A program made the translations under genes and the position numbers. The notes beneath the pieces are model-generated. The model had not been told where the DNA came from. It did not search any database and worked only from the letters and a program-made list of their open reading frames with translations. A DNA stretch of 63,132 nucleotides, counting the filler, from Platydemus manokwari (Eukaryota), in the NCBI GenBank assembly GCA_037951405.1. It is 6 parts of 6 records of this genome, joined end to end, with 100 filler letters (N's around TTAATTAATTAA, not from the genome) between each part and the next. Parts side by side here need not be neighbours in the genome. Positions count along the whole stretch, not along the records: positions 1 to 10,612 come from JBBMOY011119774.1; 5 more parts are not named here. One strand, given 5' to 3'. Shown piece after piece: positions 1-10,612 of this stretch (position 1 is its first letter; the number at the start of each line of letters is the position of its first letter).

Positions 1-2009
1 AGTATTGTTATCTCATAAATATTGTCGATGTCTAAAATTAAGGACGTTAATAAGTTCTGTACTTAAATATTGTGACGCACATCTTAGACAAATATTATTA
101 TCAGTGATGTCGTGAGAGATCAGAAATTTTCGTAGACTTTATGATTTCATTAGATTTCTTAATTGCACTAATTTTGTTTCTAAATGATTTATTAGTTTTA
201 TCAATAATATACATGTTTTATTCTATAATTTTCTCTGTGGACTTTCTTATGACGATTTTAAAAATTCTACATATCTTTCTATTTTCACTCCCTCTAGACT
301 CATTTGATACAGACTTCTATTTTCAAATAGTTTTTGAAAATTTTGGCTATTTCCATTAATTAAAACACAAAATCGCTTCTTAACGGTTGAAACACATCAC
401 TACCTACACAATGTCATAAGGTGGGTCGCAAAGTCTATTCTCAAGTTCATCTAAGGTCTTTATTATATTGTGTCGTGGTATATTGTATTATACTTCGACA
501 ATGTGGTTTAATAATACAATAATGTAATAATATGATTATAGCTAATACCTAATGTTTTAATGAGAATTGGTTAGAGATCATTATTACAAGAGGTTCGTTT
601 ATAACACGAGTTTCTGTCGAAAACTACACCTTTATGATGCAGAGCACTCAAAAAATATTTAACCGCCTCCAGCCATGAGATAATATTTCTTTAAGGAAGT
701 AGAATTGCACAAATTACCTAATTTTTCCTACTATATCAATTTTCGTCCTTCGAATTAATAATTGGTGCCTGGATAAAAATGTCTAAAATAATATTTGCTT
801 AAGAAGCATAAGAGGCATATTGTCAACAGTCTGATTAACCAGTATCATATTTTCGATAATAATCTTTACGAACCATGTTGATTTAATTATTTACAAATAT
901 CGTTATCCAGTACATATCTTTCAGTTTTTATCGGATGAAGAATTTCGTATTGAGTTATTCACTACATTCTTTTATATCATCATCAACATTATCTAGATAT
1001 TGTTTTACAATAATTTTTTACCCATGTTAATGAAGTCATAAATTAATCATTTCAGAGATTTTCACTTCATTTCCTAACCAATATAGCGAATTTTGATTGG
1101 TTCCCATTGAACGCTTAGTAATACATTGAAACAACATTTAAAATCTGAAAATCTTTAATCGCATTTGTATGTAATTATTAATTTCTTGACAATTTTTAAC
1201 ATAATTAGACCAATCTATAAATAAATAATCACAGTGGTATCTCAAAAGATCTATACGATTTTTTTGTGTTTTAATAATAACCCATTTAGACAAAGACAAA
1301 AAAAATCAAAGAGATTCCTTATCAGCCTAACCGATCGAAGCTCCCAAAACACGAGCTGTAAAAATATCAGGAATAGCCAACTCAACATTCAAAATATCTT
1401 GATATAAAATTATCGATTAATTTTGTTACTATTTTTATAAATTTTTGTAACGAAACTATACATTTCTGTGACTTCAACCATAGTGATGTGAAATGACACG
1501 CCTAAACTTTCTACTTACAATGCCACTCTCATAGAATATATTTAATAATCTTATTTTCATCACAGTCCATTGATTGGACGATGATTTTCCAGAAGATGAC
1601 AATGAAAATTGAAAAAAAAATGGTTGTAACAATAACTGGCTAGTGTTTAAAATGGAGGTGGAACTATATTAGTCGGTTTTTTTATCATATTTGTATTGAT
1701 AAGCTCTAGATACAAATCATCGGCTATTTAATTATTATTGAGATTTTGATCGTGATGATGTGCTTTGATTTTAGATGCGATCAATATCAATATATTTTTT
1801 TAAATAATATAAACAAAATGAATAATTTTAGAAAAATAATAAAGTGAAGTAATAGTTAAATAAATAAATGTGTGTATATATATGAGTGCGTGTGTGTGTA
1901 TAATAAAGATTTTTAAGCATTGTTCATTTAAATAAATCCGAAATCTAAAATTGAAAACTTATTATTTTTATTTATTAAAACAATAAAATCGATATATCTA
2001 AATTCTTAC

Positions 2010-3757
2010 CAAATCCAGTACCACAGACAGCGGTTCCAGTGGACAATGGACGTTTTTTATCAAAATATTGAGAAATTGTAATCAAACCAGCCATATAAAC
2101 CATTCCCAAACCCATTCCTAGAATTAGGAGATTTTAAATTCACCTGCAAAAATCAAAATTTACCATTGATAATTCCATAAAATATATAAAATATCCAAAT
2201 ATTTGGTGGAGCCAAAAAACAGATTATATAACTGCAACAGCTTACAAATCCACCCACAATTGCCACTGGACGAAATCCATACTTTTGGCCCAAAAATGAG
2301 GAAATAGGACCTATATATATCTCATTAAAAATATTGTATATTGTCTCTAAAAATTGAATCTTAATAATGGAATAATAATAATATAAGAATCAAAAAGAAT
2401 CAAATCCCCGTATAGTCGGTTGATTGATAATTCTCATGATTATCATTTAGTAGTTAATTTATCATTCTCTGTAACTGCCAGAGGTCATTTATTTCAGCTT
2501 AAATTAAGAAACTCATTTCGATGTCAATGTGTTATGTAATAATCGATATTTACTTTACGGTTTATTAGATGAATAAATTTTGTAGAGATAATTTCTGAAG
2601 ATTAATTCTATTTTGATGTTTAAATTAGAGTTGCAATATAATTATAAATGGTCACTTGTTTATTCAAGATTTTTCGATATTTATAGTTGAAACTATTTTT
2701 AGGAAAAAGCGTCCAGTGTGATCAACTTGGTATTTAATCCGTGAATGAGCTTAAAATAATATGGAAATTTTAAAAATAATAATTGTCATAATCCCAATAT
2801 TTAGTTTTATTCAAAATCAGATCTCATTGTAAATCAAAGTCCAGATAAAATATAAATAAATAAATTGACATCGTAGAACGTCTAAAATAATATATTAACA
2901 TTTCTGGAGAATTAATATTTGTAATAGAAATTCAAAATCGACAAACTAATATCTGATAAACATCTCTTATAAGAATCAAGATTGACTAATATGCATGATA
3001 ATTTCTATTAGGTCAGGTAAATTTCCTGGAGATTTCAATGGGACAAAATAAACGAAAACGTGATCATTTTGTCAATCAAATAATTCAATATTTATGCTTA
3101 TAAATTAATAACTGAAAAATGTCGGAAAAAATAATATTTATAACATTTATATAAGAATCAAATACACTTGAAAGCCAAAAATTATAATTTTAACAATCAT
3201 ATAATAAATAATTTTTTTGACCTTTATATACAACTGACATTTTAAATTCAATTTTTTGTTAACGTTTTTTTTCATATAAATAGATGTTGACTGATATAGG
3301 AAAATCAGTAATAAATTTTTCCTCATTTTTCAAACTAATAAATTATTCAATTCGATTTGTTTGAATAATAATCACATTTCATCTTTCTTATTATCGATTA
3401 TCACAATTAGGCATATATTATTATGGATAGTAAGGATAATGATGAAAGTTCAGCATGTTTTTAACAGATATTATGTAATTTGTAATAAAAATAAAATAAC
3501 AAACCACTCAACAATGGAAATGACACTTGCAATGCCCCAATCCAGTTTATGGCAAAGGATGCTGATTCCATGGGAGGTAAGTATTCATTCAACAATGGTC
3601 TTATCAATCCAAACGAAAAAAACATTCCATCAATCAGAGCTGAATTCATGAAAGCCGCGAATACTGTCCACCATCCATAACCCCCGTCAGGAATGATCAA
3701 TTTGAAGTTTGATTTTTTATAGTAAACGATTTCTAAATCTTCCGTACTATCTATCAT
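2010..3757 (-). CDS. Monocarboxylate transporter (SLC16/MCT family, MFS), 5' partial: exons 3757-3505, 2310-2164, 2117-2010
   Basis: Exon 1 has the MCT N-terminal motif PDGGYGW. Joining GT-AG introns in frame gives ...LLSG|PISSFLGQKYGFRPVAIVGG...YGIING|MGLGMVYMAGLITISQYFDKKRPLSTGTAVCGTGFG, which contains the family YFxKxRxLxxG motif. No downstream exons were identified before the contig end. Confidence 0.88.
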
Positions 3758-6700
3758 GTAGTCGGAATGCTAGGCGAGTTATCGTTTTTAGTAGCTGATA
3801 TTTTTAAAGTATCAATTATTCGCTGATGTTTAGTGTTTATACAATTGATGATCAATAATTATACTTGCATAATATGCATTCTTTGAGTCAGAAAACGGGA
3901 GAAACTGCGAATAAGGTCAAAGATAGAATAAAAAACTCTTCAATACAATAGTCTGTGTGTACTTGACAAAAAATATGTATGTGTGTATTTTCGTCTCTGC
4001 TTACGGCACACACGGCTTATTTCTCGAAATATTTTGTAGTCAATTTAGATCGCGTATTTCATTGGAATATTGATTTAGAAAATTCGTCATATTTTTGACT
4101 TCATTTCTAAACTCATAAGCTAACACTTGTTGATTTGAAATTTACTATTTTTCTTGTAGCCATTGAAAATGCATTTGATTTCCAGTTTTTAGTGCGATGA
4201 TTTCAATTAATACGGTTTTATAACAGATTTCACATCTGTAATTACGTGTTTTTTCTATTCAAGAAATTTTTGGCGATATTTTCTACCCATATGTATGATA
4301 TATTAGATATTTGTCAAGTTATTAAAAGCTAGTTTTACATGTCGTAGAAAATCAATTTTGGTTAGGAGTTGTTGCATAATACTAAATATGCTTGTTGAAA
4401 TTATTAATGGGAGCAAAAAATAATTCGTGTGCACGTGTTTGGAATTATCTAAATTATCTTGAGTTATTATTGAATATTTACATTAAAATATATAAATGAA
4501 TACTTAATAACCCGTGATAATAAAATAGAATAATATGATATGATAATAATAATAAATAATATTAATGATAATGGTTATGTTAAGATGGCAGAGACTTTAT
4601 TGGAATTTATTTTTACATCAGCATAGAAGAATATTTTTGAAATATTTGTAGGAAAATTGATTATGAAGTGGTAACCGATAAAATTCGCTTGTCAAACAAG
4701 ATGACGAAAAAAGTTCTTATGGAAAACAGAATTATAGTGTCAGAATTTAAAGATGGTTGTTGTCGATTTAGTCGATGATTTTAAGCAAGTATGATATTTT
4801 ACTTAGAAATACCTGGAAAAAAATGTTATATGTAAGAAACAAATAATAATGCAAATGAACGCAGGGAAAATATATTTTTTCAATTAAGCAAAATACAAAT
4901 TTTATATTACTCAAGACAATAGCATATTAAACCATCGAGGTAAACACTTTATAGAATGTTTCTCAGGTAGTCGGAAACTTCTCTCAATAAAAAAGAAAAG
5001 TATGGAACAATTACCTAGGAGCTTAAATGATTTTAGATTATCACAAGTTAACATTGAATACAAATTTATTCATCATGTTTTTGTTGATAAAAGGCAAATG
5101 ATCCCTTCGAATAATAAATGCAGAATTGTTTGTGCGTGTAATTTTTTGTGAATGAATTCGCGTAAATACAAATCGTGATTGTTGCGATCGGATGCATTTA
5201 ATTCCATCAAATATAAAAATAAATCAAAATTCCAATTTAAACCCTTCACATAGAAATAGATTTAAATAATAATGGAATTCCAAAACGAAAATTATACAAA
5301 AAATAATTAAAAATTTAAAGAGTAAAAGAAAATCGCAAATATGGAAATTTGAATTTCTATCCGCAGAATTCAAGAATACAATGTCTGAAATCAAAAAGAT
5401 GCCAAAAGAAAATATAGAGCTAACGAAAAGCAAATCAAACAATAAATTGATCATCAATTACGGAATAATAAAAAATTGTACAGATAAACATCTTCACACA
5501 TTAAAAATAAAGACACATGAAAATAATTTGTGATATGCTTTGTTAATGAGTAACATGCGTTTATTCTTTAAACAAGTCTTTGTGTTTACCAATCTATTAA
5601 CAAAGAAACCTCAAACAAAGTACAAAGAAACACCTACAACGAATTTCATATAAATAAAACTCCAAAAGCAAGTCATCGCACATCAACTATAGCGCGCTAT
5701 ACTAAAGTGCGTTGTTACTATACAAGAAAAGGAACCTTTTTTCTATAACGTATAGCAGTACATTACGAAGACATTAATGACTAGCAAGATTTGATCTATC
5801 ATTTTCAATTACATATTTTGCTTATATATCGGGAAGATATTCCCTAGTTTATTAAATAGATTGGCAATTAATAACCGGACGGATCACTACCATTTTAAAC
5901 ATTCACAAAGGTAATTTATTAATTTTACAGTAAGACATGGTAGTACTCACGAGATTATGTTACCGATTTTAAATGGATATAAACTCTTAAATACAGGTCT
6001 CTCCACCACTTTATTTTTTCCCAAGGTGTTCATCGGCCATTAAGAGGATCACGACGTAAGATAATTTTATTTTGAAGTAGTAGTGTGTTTTAAATCTATT
6101 ATTTTCCTTTAAATAAAATTTGATTTAGCCTAATCATGTTATTTATACCCTAATCATCTTACTAATATAAAAATTTGCACTACCTTCTGGAGCCGAGTAG
6201 TCTGTTTAAGTTTTTACTATCTCAACTTAATTTTCATTTGTATTTAGAAATATGAAATTTTAAACTCTAGTTAAAACATCAGTTTAAACATGTTATTAAA
6301 ACTCGTGTAAAGGGTGAATCTAATTCGCTGTTATTTACTATTTTAGGAATAACAAGTTTGTATATGTTCTTTGTCAGTGAGGTACTGTGTTTAGAAATCT
6401 TTATTTCCATTCTTAGCTATATTTCTGTTTTGACAACAGTGTATTATACTTAGCAACATATGTTAATTTCAGAGAATAAATGTTGGTACTTGTATCTAGC
6501 TTCGTGAATTTGAATTTTTCATACTTCTTTATTTCAAAATTTTGAAAATTTTAGATATGGATGTCTAATTTTTTTTAAATATTATCTATTTTTTAGTTTG
6601 TATGCATTTTTTAATATTTTTTGTTTCTATTTTGAAAATTTTGAAATTCTAATTTTAGTTGTCTATGGCTTTATTCAAATTTATTAATTATTATTTATAT

Positions 6701-8540: not shown

Positions 8541-10005
8541 TTTCCTATCTCAACTGAACCTGCAATAAATAAATAACAAGGTTTGTTCTGCAATTAATTA
8601 AGTCAATTTCTCGAAATGGGGATATAAGATTATAATTCACTTATTCAAATAAACGATTGTAAATTTATGTGGGTGTTCATATATAAATAATAATTACTTA
8701 ATAATTTGATTTTTATTGTGCTTTATTTTAGATATTTTTAACTTTAATATTGAAACTAAAAATTTCCAAAAAAATATTTTCATTTAATATGAATTAAAAA
8801 TTAAATTTCAAAATTAAAAACAAATCAATAACAATAAAACATACGCAAAATAATTCTAAACCTTAGGAAAAAATTTGTTTGTTAATAAATGATTTAAATA
8901 CACAATAAATTAATCTTACCAAATTGTGAAATAAATTATTCATAAGATTATATTAAAAATTTCTCAATCAATATTTCGATATTTTTATTTATTTATAATG
9001 GAATTTCATATTATAGCATTTTTGGCATAACATGGATATAATTAAATGAATCAATGAAAACATTTTGTGATTCCATTCTGAAAAATTCAGTGGATAAATA
9101 AATTACTGGAAAGAAATTTTATCATAAGTAAGATATCACAATATTTATTCTACTTAGAACATAGCAATTCGCTTAGTGTTCATTGATTTACAAATTATGC
9201 TAAAGTTAAGAAAAAGAATCCTTAAATATAATTTTAATTTTGTTGAGTTTATTTCAAAAAATTATATCGTTTAATTAATTATTTTTTATCAAAGATATTA
9301 TATTTCAGTGGATTCTCTAATCAAACCAGTTTTGAATCCAAATATATCGACTTTGGGGAAGCATTTAATGTACGCCTTGATGAAATGATATTTAAAATGA
9401 TAAAATTATATAAATACAATACGAATTTTAAAATCTAAATATTTATAGCTCTCTCAAGGGCGAAGTAATTGGATTAAAAAGTTATCTGATTAAGAAATTA
9501 TTTGAAAAGTTATTTAGAATAATCAAATTTTAAAATTTTAATTGATGTAAAAATTATCAATTGATATTCTTAATAAAGCTCATTAATGGTAATTTATTAA
9601 ATAGTTTTTATAAAGATTATTTGAAAAATGATAAAATATTCAATGGATCTATGTTGGAAAAGAAGTATTCATAAAAAATAAAAACGGATGAAAAATATAA
9701 AATCAATCAACCAAGTATATTTATGGAGAATAAAAGCGTTATTTTTTTCATGAAATAATTAAAATATTTCTTTAAAATATTTATTGTACAATAATTTTTG
9801 AAATTTTACATAAATGTTAGATATGATTAATTCAAATTTAAAACAATTTTGACTAATTAATTTTATTAATAATTTTAAAAAATTCTAACATCAGCTTCAA
9901 TCATTTACATAATTCGGTCATCAAAATCTATGTTTACACTTTAGTAGAGTTGTTAAGTAGTCAAGATACAAAAAATAGATAAACTACCTTTTGTTGAAAA
10001 AATTG

Positions 10006-10063
10006 GTCCTATTTCGGCATTCCATTGGCCTCATCAGTATCCCGGTTCAGAGATATATAGGAC
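10006..10063 (-). ncRNA. Type III hammerhead ribozyme, copy A
   Basis: Minus strand reads GTCCTAT-A-TATCTC-TGAACC-GGGATA-CTGATGA-GGC-CAATGGAAT-GCC-GAA-ATAGGAC. Core CUGAUGA and GAAA are intact, stems I, II and III all pair, and the AUA cleavage triplet predicts a cut between 10056 and 10055. Confidence 0.9.
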
Positions 10064-10130
10064 AATCTCTCGGAGCCTTCAAGAATGATGGTAGCAATGA
10101 TGATGATGGTAGTTTTATGATACAGATAGT

Positions 10131-10188
10131 GCCCTATTTCTGCCTTCCATAGGCCTCATCAGTATCTCGGTTCAGAGATATATAGGAC
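10131..10188 (-). ncRNA. Type III hammerhead ribozyme, copy B (G10.1-C11.1 pair mutated to G-A)
   Basis: Minus strand reads GTCCTAT-A-TATCTC-TGAACC-GAGATA-CTGATGA-GGCCTATGGAAGGCA-GAA-ATAGGGC. It has 5 differences from copy A in 58 nt, and the predicted cut is between 10181 and 10180. Confidence 0.82.
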
Positions 10189-10299
10189 TAAAAGAAATAT
10201 AGAAAATAACCATCTGTTTATATTAAAATTTTGAGACTAATTCATCAAGTAACTCAAAATCTAGGATTACTATATTATTGCTAAAAATTCACGCAGAAT

Positions 10300-10369
10300 C
10301 GACAGGATTTTAAAGCGCTGACAGGCAATAAATTTCGAAGCACTATTGCCGTCAGGATAAATTCTGTCG
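10300..10369. repeat. Long imperfect stem-loop
   Basis: CGACAGGATTT pairs with AAATTCTGTCG (one G-U on the + strand), and CTGAC(A)GGCAATA pairs with TATTGCCGTCAG (1-nt bulge). Confidence 0.7.
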
Positions 10370-10400
10370 TAGAATGAAAAATTTAATTCGCAATGGATGA

Positions 10401-10443
10401 CAGATTGAGCTACGTGTATGATCTATGATCGTAGCTCAATCTG
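10401..10443. repeat. Perfect 14-bp inverted repeat with 15-nt loop
   Basis: CAGATTGAGCTACG ... CGTAGCTCAATCTG. Confidence 0.85.
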
Positions 10444-10612
10444 ATAATTAATTGAAAACAATCATTATATTATAATGAATTATAATTATTATATAAAAAG
10501 TACATATTATCAACTAGTATAAATAATTGAAAAATATTATACAAAACAAAAAAATAAAAATTTTCTGTTCAAATTTAAAAAATTATTAAATTACATTAAC
10601 GATATTTTATTT

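What the first reader, a model, noticed from the sequence alone, without database searches (positions are those of the whole stretch)
10006..10188. Tandem type III hammerhead ribozymes delimiting a 125-nt unit: candidate minimal retrozyme / self-processed circular RNA
Seen: two 58-nt direct repeats on the minus strand, 125 nt apart. Each folds as a complete type III hammerhead: stem III GTCCTAT/ATAGGRC, AUA cleavage triplet, stem I TATCTC/GRGATA with loop UGAACC, core CUGAUGA...GAAA, and stem II consensus GGCC-WAUGGAA-GGCC. The repeat boundaries coincide exactly with the ribozyme, and the two differences in stems I and III are G-U-compatible, which suggests structural constraint. Established: double-hammerhead units release a monomer that can be circularised (plant LTR retrozymes use type III; the classic animal tandem arrays in newt, Schistosoma and cave cricket are type I). 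Inference: transcription would release a 125-nt non-coding monomer (10180-10056) that re-forms a ribozyme on circularisation. That would be a very small type III retrozyme-like element in an animal-type genome, presumably mobilised by a host RT.
Basis: partly seen in the sequence, partly recalled or inferred. Interest (0 to 1): 0.93.

Follow-up and report, generated by a model that had tools for sequence, protein, structure and literature searches.

The report
Twin hammerhead ribozymes inside LTR-like repeat
The two hammerhead-ribozyme-shaped repeats are real, but they are a fixed part of an old ~840-base LTR-like mobile element present in hundreds of decayed copies, and not a free-standing 125-nt mini-retrozyme.

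Summary
Two 58-nt repeats lie 125 nt apart on the minus strand. Both have the type III hammerhead (HHR) core and three helices.

- **The 125-nt unit is not a repeat or a mobile unit.** In every copy seen, the HHR pair sits at the same place near the 3' end of a dispersed non-coding element of about 839 bp.
- **Element features.** Its ends are TGTTA...TAACA. A 4-bp target-site duplication is perfect in 7 of 18 complete copies. Flanks are unique. There are at least 154 close motif hits, and probably 300-800 copies.
- **What was not found.** No array has more than two HHRs. No copy of the unit lies outside the element. No second LTR, internal region, PBS or PPT was found.
- **Two paralogues.** Family-wide, the upstream HHR (AUC site) and the downstream HHR (AUA site) differ. 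One compensatory G-C/A-U change in helix I separates them, and their flanks share no similarity. This suggests past selection on both ribozymes.
- **Present copies decay neutrally.** About half keep the core, and no sampled element keeps both HHRs intact. In the window the downstream copy looks competent. The upstream copy has a G·A mismatch next to the core.

Rfam's Hammerhead_3 threshold is not met. No RNA data exist, so cleavage and circularisation remain untested. My best reading is solo-LTR-type copies of a retrozyme-like LTR retroelement in a non-plant, probably invertebrate, genome.

The parts
9951..10612 (-). 3' 662 nt of one copy of a ~839-bp dispersed non-coding LTR-like element. Its 5' ~175 nt are cut off by the contig end at 10612. 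It ends ...CTTAACA at 9951.
   Evidence: Family alignments and BLAST boundaries. 3' end pattern hit at 9951-9965. Contig depth in run X1 jumps from about 7-285 to about 1600-6600 at the boundary.
10131..10188 (-). Upstream hammerhead motif (position A). The core is intact, helix III has one G-U, and the G10.1.A11.1 mismatch probably impairs it. Its sequence is mostly of the downstream (B) type, which suggests conversion by its neighbour.
   Evidence: It fails the strict descriptor.
10006..10063 (-). Downstream hammerhead motif (position B). It has a complete type III core, a 6-bp helix I, a 3-bp helix II plus a C.U mismatch, and a 7-bp helix III.
10064..10130 (-). 67-nt spacer between the two motifs. 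It is conserved in the family as part of the element and has no marked structure.
10056..10180 (-). Predicted 125-nt RNA between the two cleavage sites (after A10181 and after A10056). This is a prediction only.
   Evidence: Positions read. Spacing is exactly 125 in 27 of 35 copies.
10217..10224 (-). TATA-like box (AATATAAA here, TATATAAA in most copies), 29-36 nt upstream of the first hammerhead. A possible promoter element (inference).
9997..10002 (-). T6 run starting 4 nt after the second hammerhead (T4-T6 in other copies). A possible Pol III-type terminator (inference, in an AT-rich genome).
10401..10443 (.). Perfect 14-bp hairpin inside the element, conserved across copies. Function unknown.
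9947..9950 (-). ACTC, the flank next to the element's 3' end. It would be one half of the 4-bp target-site duplication. The other half lies beyond the contig end.
   Evidence: TSDs in other copies.

Best explanation
The two motifs are genuine hammerhead ribozymes of type III topology, active at least ancestrally. They are built into a ~839-bp non-coding retroelement unit that looks like a long terminal repeat: TG...CA ends, a 5-bp terminal inverted repeat, a 4-bp target-site duplication and a preference for AT-rich targets.

The genome holds several hundred old copies, about 80% identical to each other. All are single units, like solo LTRs. The window holds one such copy, cut by the contig end.

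Inferred mechanism:
- A master element is transcribed, possibly from the TATA-like box about 35 nt upstream of the first ribozyme.
- The RNA is cut by either or both ribozymes.
- That circle is copied by the reverse transcriptase of an autonomous LTR retrotransposon and inserted by its integrase.
- Single-LTR cDNAs would give the dead-on-arrival single units that are seen.

Cutting at both ribozymes of one unit would also release a 125-nt by-product. That RNA is not the unit that multiplies.

Shown: the motif, family membership, element boundaries, TSDs, copy decay and the difference between the two paralogues.
Inferred: transcription, cleavage, circularisation and the LTR-type route.
For: - **Motif.** It is present and far beyond chance: 0 descriptor hits in 20 Mb of matched random sequence, and 154 genomic hits against 0 control hits for a 30-base ribozyme pattern.
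- **Folding.** Natural copies that match the majority sequence fold to the hammerhead as the minimum-energy structure.
- **Pairing.** 90% of stem cells pair in 73 copies, against 36-45% when the partners are slid.
- **Paralogues.** The upstream and downstream ribozymes differ at 9 of 58 positions. None of these is in the core, and all keep the pairing, including a G-C to A-U swap at pair 10-25 (28 versus 35 sequences). The sequences next to the two ribozymes show no similarity.
- **Element boundaries.** They are sharp, with TGTTA...TAACA ends.
- **TSDs.** The 4-bp TSD is perfect in 7 of 18 complete copies and matches 3 of 4 bases in 5 more. A chance 4-base match has a probability of about 0.01.
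- **Flanks.** They are unique on both sides in more than 60 copies. ATAT is a frequent target.
- **Literature.** Plant retrozyme work reports 4-bp TSDs, many solo LTRs, and single-LTR cDNAs expected from circular templates (PMC4918200, PMC11722881).
Against: - **No full-length element.** I found no copy with two units, an internal region, a PBS or a PPT. The assembly is very fragmented, at 1.99 million contigs.
- **Rfam.** The Hammerhead_3 score is far below threshold.
- **Loop 2.** It is 7 nt (5 nt in the downstream type) rather than the usual 4 nt, so the tertiary contact is uncertain.
- **Fate of the pair.** If both ribozymes always cut, a circle-derived copy would carry one ribozyme, not two. 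The model therefore needs incomplete cleavage.
- **No intact element.** None of the 38 sampled elements keeps both ribozymes intact.
- **No RNA data.** No RNA data exist for this organism.
- **Host.** It is not identified.
Confidence: 0.6

Rival explanations
1. The 125-nt unit is itself a minimal retrozyme: it is released by the two ribozymes, circularised, reverse-transcribed and re-inserted as an independent mobile element.
For: Two ribozymes in direct orientation are the arrangement that active retrozymes need. The spacing is strikingly constant, exactly 125 nt in 27 of 35 copies. Helix III strands are the same in both ribozymes, so a ligated circle would re-form a ribozyme.
Against: - The unit never occurs outside the ~839-bp element, and never in arrays of more than two ribozymes.
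- Homology and TSDs define the 839-bp unit as what moved.
- The circle is not more structured than shuffled sequence, with a mean z of +0.5.
- 125 nt is below the 170-400 nt reported for animal retrozymes (PMC7229834).
Confidence: 0.04
2. The twin ribozymes form a small expression cassette carried by the element: TATA-like box, ribozyme, 67-nt insert, ribozyme, T-run. Its product is a 125-nt RNA with 5'-OH and cyclic-phosphate ends, possibly circularised by RtcB, that serves the element or the host. This may hold together with the main explanation.
For: The TATA-like box lies 29-36 nt upstream of the first ribozyme, and a T4-T6 run starts a few nt after the second, in most copies. Both ribozymes were kept while their flanks diverged beyond recognition. 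The spacing is constant.
Against: - AT-rich sequence gives TATA-like and T-run strings by chance, and T4 runs also lie between the box and the first ribozyme.
- These motifs are no better conserved than the rest of the element.
- The spacer shows no structure or recognisable motif.
- There are no RNA data.
Confidence: 0.2
3. The ~839-bp unit is a non-autonomous DNA transposon moved by a retroviral-type (DDE) integrase/transposase, for example Ginger-like with TGT...ACA ends and a 4-bp TSD. It happens to carry ribozymes.
For: All copies are single units with TSDs, and no LTR pair or internal region was found. The ends form a short inverted repeat, TGTTA/TAACA.
Against: The inverted repeat is only 5 bp, which is typical of LTR ends and not of DNA-transposon TIRs (my own knowledge). 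Self-cleaving ribozymes have so far been tied to RNA-mediated elements (PMC7936874, PMC7761336). Solo LTRs are a known majority form for retrozymes (PMC4918200).
Confidence: 0.12
4. Chance resemblance. The repeats are an ordinary internal duplication of a transposon that happens to look like a hammerhead and never cleaved.
For: Rfam's curated threshold is not met. Genomic copies show no purifying selection.
Against: - All invariant core nucleotides and all three helices are present in the majority sequence of both paralogues.
- There were 0 descriptor hits in 20 Mb of matched random sequence.
- The repeat boundaries coincide with the motif in several copies.
- All 9 differences between the paralogues avoid the core and keep the pairing.
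Confidence: 0.03

Closest known systems
Plant LTR retrozymes (Cervera, Urbina & de la Pena 2016, PMC4918200)
   Same: Type III hammerhead embedded in an LTR-like unit. Helix I of 6 bp with a 6-nt loop. Non-coding. TG...CA-type ends. 4-bp TSDs, including CTAT-like AT-rich targets. Many single-LTR copies.
   Different: Here there are two ribozymes 125 nt apart within one unit, rather than one per LTR 600-1000 nt apart. The unit is ~839 bp rather than 300-400 bp. GC is about 26% rather than above 55%. No full element with PBS and PPT was found. The host is not a plant. Loop 2 is 5-7 nt rather than 4 nt.
Metazoan non-LTR retrozymes (Cervera & de la Pena 2020, PMC7229834; bioRxiv 10.64898/2026.07.22.740005)
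   Same: Low-GC, non-coding repeats with hammerheads in direct orientation in an invertebrate-type genome. The predicted small RNA would have ribozyme-made ends.
   Different: Those carry type I ribozymes in tandem arrays of 150-450-bp units. They have no LTR features, have larger TSDs or none, form highly self-paired circles, and are linked to Penelope-like elements. None of this holds here.
Solo LTRs of Ty3/gypsy-type retrotransposons
   Same: TG...CA ends with a short inverted repeat, 4-bp TSD, AT-rich target preference, a size of several hundred bp, and single units with unique flanks.
   Different: No internal gag-pol region or partner LTR was found for this family. Ordinary LTRs are not known to carry hammerheads.
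Atypical type III hammerheads of HDV-like circular RNAs and dipteran genomes (PMC7936874)
   Same: Type III topology in animal-associated sequences.
   Different: Those have unusually long helices I and II and pseudoknot contacts. The motif here has the compact viroid/retrozyme-like geometry.

Membership tests
Hammerhead ribozyme, type III | Conserved core: C3-U4-G5-A6-N7-G8-A9, G12-A13-A14, the A15.1-U16.1 pair, and H17 not G | tested here: met
   Both window copies and the majority sequence of both paralogues have it. About half of the sampled genomic copies keep it (21 of 44 and 23 of 48).
Hammerhead ribozyme, type III | Three helices around the core, with helix III open and helices I and II capped by loops | tested here: met
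   The minimum-energy folds give exactly this. 90% of stem cells are paired in 73 copies.
Hammerhead ribozyme, type III | G10.1-C11.1 pair at the base of helix II | tested here: inconclusive
   Met in the downstream window copy and in the family majority. Not met in the upstream window copy, which has G.A.
Hammerhead ribozyme, type III | Score at or above Rfam RF00008 gathering threshold (48.5 bits) | tested here: not met
   No hit on the window at E<=10. Family members score 16-26 bits.
Hammerhead ribozyme, type III | Loop 1-loop 2 tertiary contact that gives activity at physiological Mg2+ | not testable with these tools
   Loop 1 is 6 nt, which is typical. Loop 2 is 5-7 nt rather than 4 nt. 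A 2-3-bp CC/GG contact is possible by eye only.
Hammerhead ribozyme, type III | Site-specific self-cleavage | not testable with these tools
   This needs in vitro transcription of natural copies.
LTR retrozyme | Type III hammerhead inside a long terminal repeat | tested here: inconclusive
   The ribozymes lie in a unit with LTR-type ends and TSDs. That the unit is an LTR is inferred, because no repeat pair was seen.
LTR retrozyme | Two direct LTRs flanking a non-coding region with a PBS and a PPT | tested here: not met
   All complete copies are single units. More than 60 flanks on each side are unique, with no recurring PBS or PPT. The fragmented assembly limits this test.
LTR retrozyme | 4-bp target-site duplication | tested here: met
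   Perfect in 7 of 18 complete copies, 3 of 4 bases in 5, and 2 or fewer in 6. This is about what roughly 10% decay per site predicts.
LTR retrozyme | Expressed as a circular RNA delimited by the ribozyme sites | not testable with these tools
   No RNA runs exist for this organism.
Metazoan non-LTR retrozyme | Type I hammerhead in each unit of a tandem array | tested here: not met
   The topology is type III. There are never more than two ribozymes per locus.
Metazoan non-LTR retrozyme | Monomer RNA with a stable, highly self-paired fold | tested here: not met
   Circular folds of 35 natural 125-nt units give a mean z of +0.5 against shuffles.

The most novel reading that the evidence does not exclude
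This would be the first LTR-type retrozyme family with type III hammerheads outside plants, in an invertebrate (possibly flatworm) genome. Its LTR would carry a natural 'ribozyme-insert-ribozyme' cassette that releases a 125-nt RNA with ligatable ends, comparable to engineered twin-ribozyme circular-RNA expression systems.
Probability: 0.15. Interest if true: 0.75.

Novelty: new variant of a known kind. Interest (0 to 1): 0.5.

Why it matters
The current picture is that type III hammerheads go with LTR retrozymes of plants, and type I hammerheads go with non-LTR, Penelope-linked retrozymes of animals. The literature I could read adds only a hint of unpublished type III elements in insects (PMC7761336).

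A family of several hundred LTR-like units carrying two type III hammerheads, in a genome that is not a plant's, would blur that division. It would also bear on the proposed horizontal origin of plant retrozymes.

The twin arrangement, 125 nt apart within one unit, is unusual. It poses a concrete question: how can an element keep two self-cleaving sites and still be copied whole?

The family looks extinct, and nothing is known about its RNA. The immediate value is therefore as a lead, not as a demonstrated system.

Tried and rejected
- **Rfam.** I scanned the whole piece and then the 281-nt region. There was no hammerhead hit. A weak MIR845_1 hit (22 bits) on the element's hairpin and several snoRNA-like hits are taken as chance.
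- **tRNA scan.** Four full-length copies gave none, so a tRNA-derived SINE is rejected.
- **Bacterial promoter/terminator scan.** Uninformative.
- **Metagenome and viral contig collections.** The ribozyme pattern gave 0 matches in each.
- **Sequencing runs.** Only two DNA-type runs hold the stretch, and none is RNA.
  - Laying their contigs gave copy depth and boundary information only.
  - Apparent 'go-back' joints are explained by the downstream-type ribozyme of other copies aligning to the window's converted upstream copy. They are not trimers.
- **Shared 3' flanks.**
  - Three contigs share a flank after a CATGACCACTTAACA string. They turned out to be an unrelated repeat.
  - Two other copies share a flank and lack the downstream ribozyme. 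These are a duplicated deleted copy or an older subfamily.
- **Internal LTR-like repeats.** Within the 839-bp unit only the ribozymes repeat. Other matches are short AT-rich strings.
- **Covariation in genomic copies.** Only the difference between the two paralogues is real. Four single-copy double changes are about what chance predicts.
- **Host identification.**
  - Arthropod cuticle-protein family: 1 hit on a 271-bp contig.
  - Insect odorant-receptor family: 0 hits.
  - Atlas search with a ribosomal protein: uninformative.
- **A fuzzy-regex script.** It timed out and was replaced by BLAST.

Full report
**1. The observation**

On the minus strand the window holds two 58-nt repeats, at 10188-10131 (upstream, position A) and 10063-10006 (downstream, position B). 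Their starts are 125 nt apart.

Each reads as follows:
- helix III 5' strand GUCCUAU
- cleavage nucleotide A
- helix I UAUCUC / GRGAUA with loop UGAACC
- CUGAUGA
- helix II
- GAAA
- helix III 3' strand

Each folds to the three-way junction as its minimum-energy structure.

- The copies differ at 5 of 58 positions.
- Neither has a perfect helix II. The downstream copy has a C.U mismatch at the loop end. The upstream copy has a G.A mismatch at the core-proximal 10.1-11.1 pair, which is normally G-C.

A strict type III descriptor that I wrote finds only the downstream copy in the window. It finds nothing in 20 Mb of random sequence with the window's dinucleotide composition.

Rfam's Hammerhead_3 model reports nothing on the window even at E<=10. 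It gives only 16-26 bits on other family members, against a threshold of 48.5 bits. By that curated test, membership is not met. By the defining core and helices, it is.

**2. What the pair belongs to**

A search of the window's own genome (911 Mb in 1.99 million contigs) with the 183-nt pair gave 377 candidates. All 40 that were scored are 81-87% identical over the whole pair. A 30-base ribozyme pattern with up to 2 mismatches gave 154 hits against 0 for the reversed control.

Aligning the flanks showed that homology runs far beyond the pair. Longer contigs then defined a unit of about 839 bp with sharp ends. In that unit the ribozymes sit at about 600-657 and 725-782, followed by a 60-70-nt tail.

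The window copy spans 9951-10612. It lacks about 175 nt at its 5' end because the contig stops there. In a DNA run that holds the locus, summed contig depth rises from about 7-285 in the flank to about 1600-6600 inside the element. This suggests some 300-800 copies.

The unit begins TGTTA and ends TAACA. Of 18 complete copies:
- 7 have a perfect 4-bp direct duplication of the flank,
- 5 match at 3 of 4 bases,
- 6 match at 2 or fewer.

A chance match of 4 bases has a probability of about 0.01 here. The spread is about what roughly 10% decay per site predicts. ATAT is a frequent target.

More than 60 flanks on each side are unique. I found no recurring sequence after ...TAACA that could be a primer-binding site. 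I found none before TGTTA... that could be a polypurine tract. No contig carries two units, and none carries more than two ribozymes.

Inside the unit nothing but the ribozyme is repeated. No tRNA-like part is found.

**3. Is the ribozyme shape maintained?**

In most copies the two ribozymes are different paralogues:

| Feature | Upstream (A) | Downstream (B) |
|---|---|---|
| Cleavage triplet | AUC | AUA |
| Helix I | UGUCUC / GAGGCA | UAUCUC / GGGAUA |
| Loop 1 | UGGUCC | UGAACC |

Their majority sequences differ at 9 of 58 positions.
- None of the 9 is in the core.
- All keep the pairing.
- One pair is swapped on both sides: G-C in 28 sequences and A-U in 35.
- The sequences immediately beside the two ribozymes show no similarity, and the repeat ends coincide with the motif in several copies.

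I take this as evidence that both ribozymes were kept by selection in the lineage that gave rise to the family.

Present copies, in contrast, decay like any dead transposon.
- Divergence from the majority is 5% in the core, 7-8% in stems and 8-10% in loops. The core figure is biased low, because part of the sample was picked with a core pattern.
- Four single-copy double changes in helices I and II are about the number expected by chance.
- Only about half of the ribozymes keep the core.
- About one in six also keeps the 10.1-11.1 pair with at most one stem mismatch.
- None of 38 elements with two ribozymes keeps both.

The window's upstream ribozyme is unusual. It carries mostly downstream-type states. 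Its closest relative (L037) shows a shorter tract of the same kind. This points to conversion between the two neighbours. It also makes the window's two repeats look more alike (91%) than is typical for the family (84%).

**4. The 125-nt unit**

It is never found outside the element or in arrays. The spacing is exactly 125 nt in 27 of 35 copies. Folded as a circle, however, the unit is no more stable than shuffled sequence, with a mean z of +0.5. Described retrozyme circles are highly self-paired (PMC7229834, PMC4918200).

A few contigs of the DNA run lack just this unit and keep a single chimeric ribozyme. Recombination between the repeats explains this as well as an RNA-level excision would.

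**5. Most likely mechanism**

TG...CA ends with a 5-bp inverted repeat, 4-bp duplications and AT-rich targets are the marks of insertion by a retroviral-type integrase. The single units look like solo LTRs.

Plant LTR retrozymes have the following reported features (PMC4918200, PMC11722881):
- type III hammerheads in their LTRs,
- 4-bp duplications,
- many solo LTRs,
- circular RNA templates that are expected to yield single-LTR cDNAs.

I therefore read the family as the solo-LTR-type remains of a retrozyme-like LTR retroelement.

A TATA-like box lies 29-36 nt before the first ribozyme, and a T4-T6 run starts a few nt after the second. Transcription could thus start just before the pair. In an AT-rich genome this is weak evidence.

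The twin arrangement needs incomplete cleavage. Molecules cut at only one kind of site in two successive units would keep a full unit with both ribozymes. Cutting at both sites of one unit would release the 125-nt piece as a by-product or as a product of its own.

No step of this RNA pathway could be tested, because no RNA run exists for the organism.

**6. Host**

The organism is hidden, and the assembly is mixed. It holds four full-length mitochondrial COX1 genes.
- One reads AAA at positions that are asparagine everywhere else, which is the flatworm/echinoderm code.
- Two look gastropod-like and one looks arthropod-like, judged from my own memory of such sequences.
- Arthropod marker families are nearly absent.
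- Some HSP70 matches carry in-frame TAA codons.

Contigs that carry the element are 25-30% GC and hold ordinary nuclear genes that use standard stop codons. A flatworm with prey is my guess, no more.

**7. Comparison and novelty**

The motif works like, and looks like, the compact type III hammerheads of viroids and plant retrozymes: a 6-bp helix I, a 6-nt loop 1 and a 4-5-bp helix II (PMC7936874 for the typical geometry). The element works like an LTR retrozyme in its ends and duplications.

It fails the retrozyme definition on the two-LTR/PBS/PPT architecture, which I looked for and did not find. It fails every feature of the animal non-LTR retrozymes.

Type III hammerheads in animal genomes are known only as atypical long-helix forms (PMC7936874) and from a remark on unpublished insect elements (PMC7761336). 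I rate it a new variant of a known kind, of moderate interest. The family is real and unusual, but old, apparently inactive and without RNA evidence.

**8. Limits**

- Only about 70 loci were read, and they were chosen by similarity to the window copy or to the ribozyme pattern.
- Counts are lower bounds.
- The fragmented assembly could hide full-length elements.
- I used 58-nt majority strings of the two ribozymes as search probes, and I built no consensus of the element.

Noticed in passing
L031 (G000:C1153215:4691-4747, minus strand): A canonical type III hammerhead: helix III GAUUGA/UCAAUC, a 6-bp helix I and a 4-bp helix II. It scores 44.6 bits, just under Rfam's threshold. It is single-copy in the genome and unrelated to the family studied.
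   Followed up: partly
L032 (G000:C1699800:796-850, minus strand): Another canonical type III hammerhead with a GUC site and an 8-bp helix III, in a GC-rich context (43.6 bits). It may come from a different organism in the mixed assembly.
   Followed up: no
L073-L076 (four COX1 contigs of G000): The assembly holds four different full-length mitochondrial COX1 genes, 62-87% identical as proteins. One (L076) uses AAA where asparagine is universal, which is the flatworm-type code. The 'genome' therefore mixes several animals.
   Followed up: partly
G000 contigs C298669, C687763, C1377747, C1114853 (not fetched): HSP70 matches with 1-4 in-frame TAA codons and no other stops. This hints at an organism with a ciliate-type nuclear code in the mix, or at pseudogenes.
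   Followed up: no
window 10401-10443 and about 10318-10355: Two hairpins inside the element are conserved across copies. One is a perfect 14-bp stem, and the other is an imperfect 12-13-bp stem (CUGACGGCAAUA / UAUUGCCUGUCAG). The first gives a weak MIR845_1 match (22 bits, E 0.75), probably by chance.
   Followed up: partly
L081 (852-1623) and L082 (24-558): Two copies about 75% like the reference lack the downstream ribozyme (reference positions 713-784). They share about 350 nt of 3' flank. They are either a duplicated deleted copy or an older one-ribozyme subfamily.
   Followed up: partly
L083 (G000:C1199655:1-3684): The whole contig is a perfect palindrome of itself, with the element present in both arms. 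This is most likely an assembly artefact.
   Followed up: no
family alignment A1, columns 20-21 and 47-48: CpG positions in the ribozymes (CCGG, CCGAAA) are the most often mutated, to TG or CA. This suggests cytosine methylation in the host genome.
   Followed up: no
run X2 (organism B), laid on window 10133-10300 and 10460-10546: A run labelled as another organism holds one piece of the element that is 82% alike and an 87-nt piece that is identical. The family may be shared with a relative, or the samples may overlap.
   Followed up: no
L034 (G000:C1519122:1-329): A tandem array of ~26-nt units, each containing CTGATGAG. It rang the Hammerhead_3 model at 26 bits and is a false positive of the motif search.
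   Followed up: no
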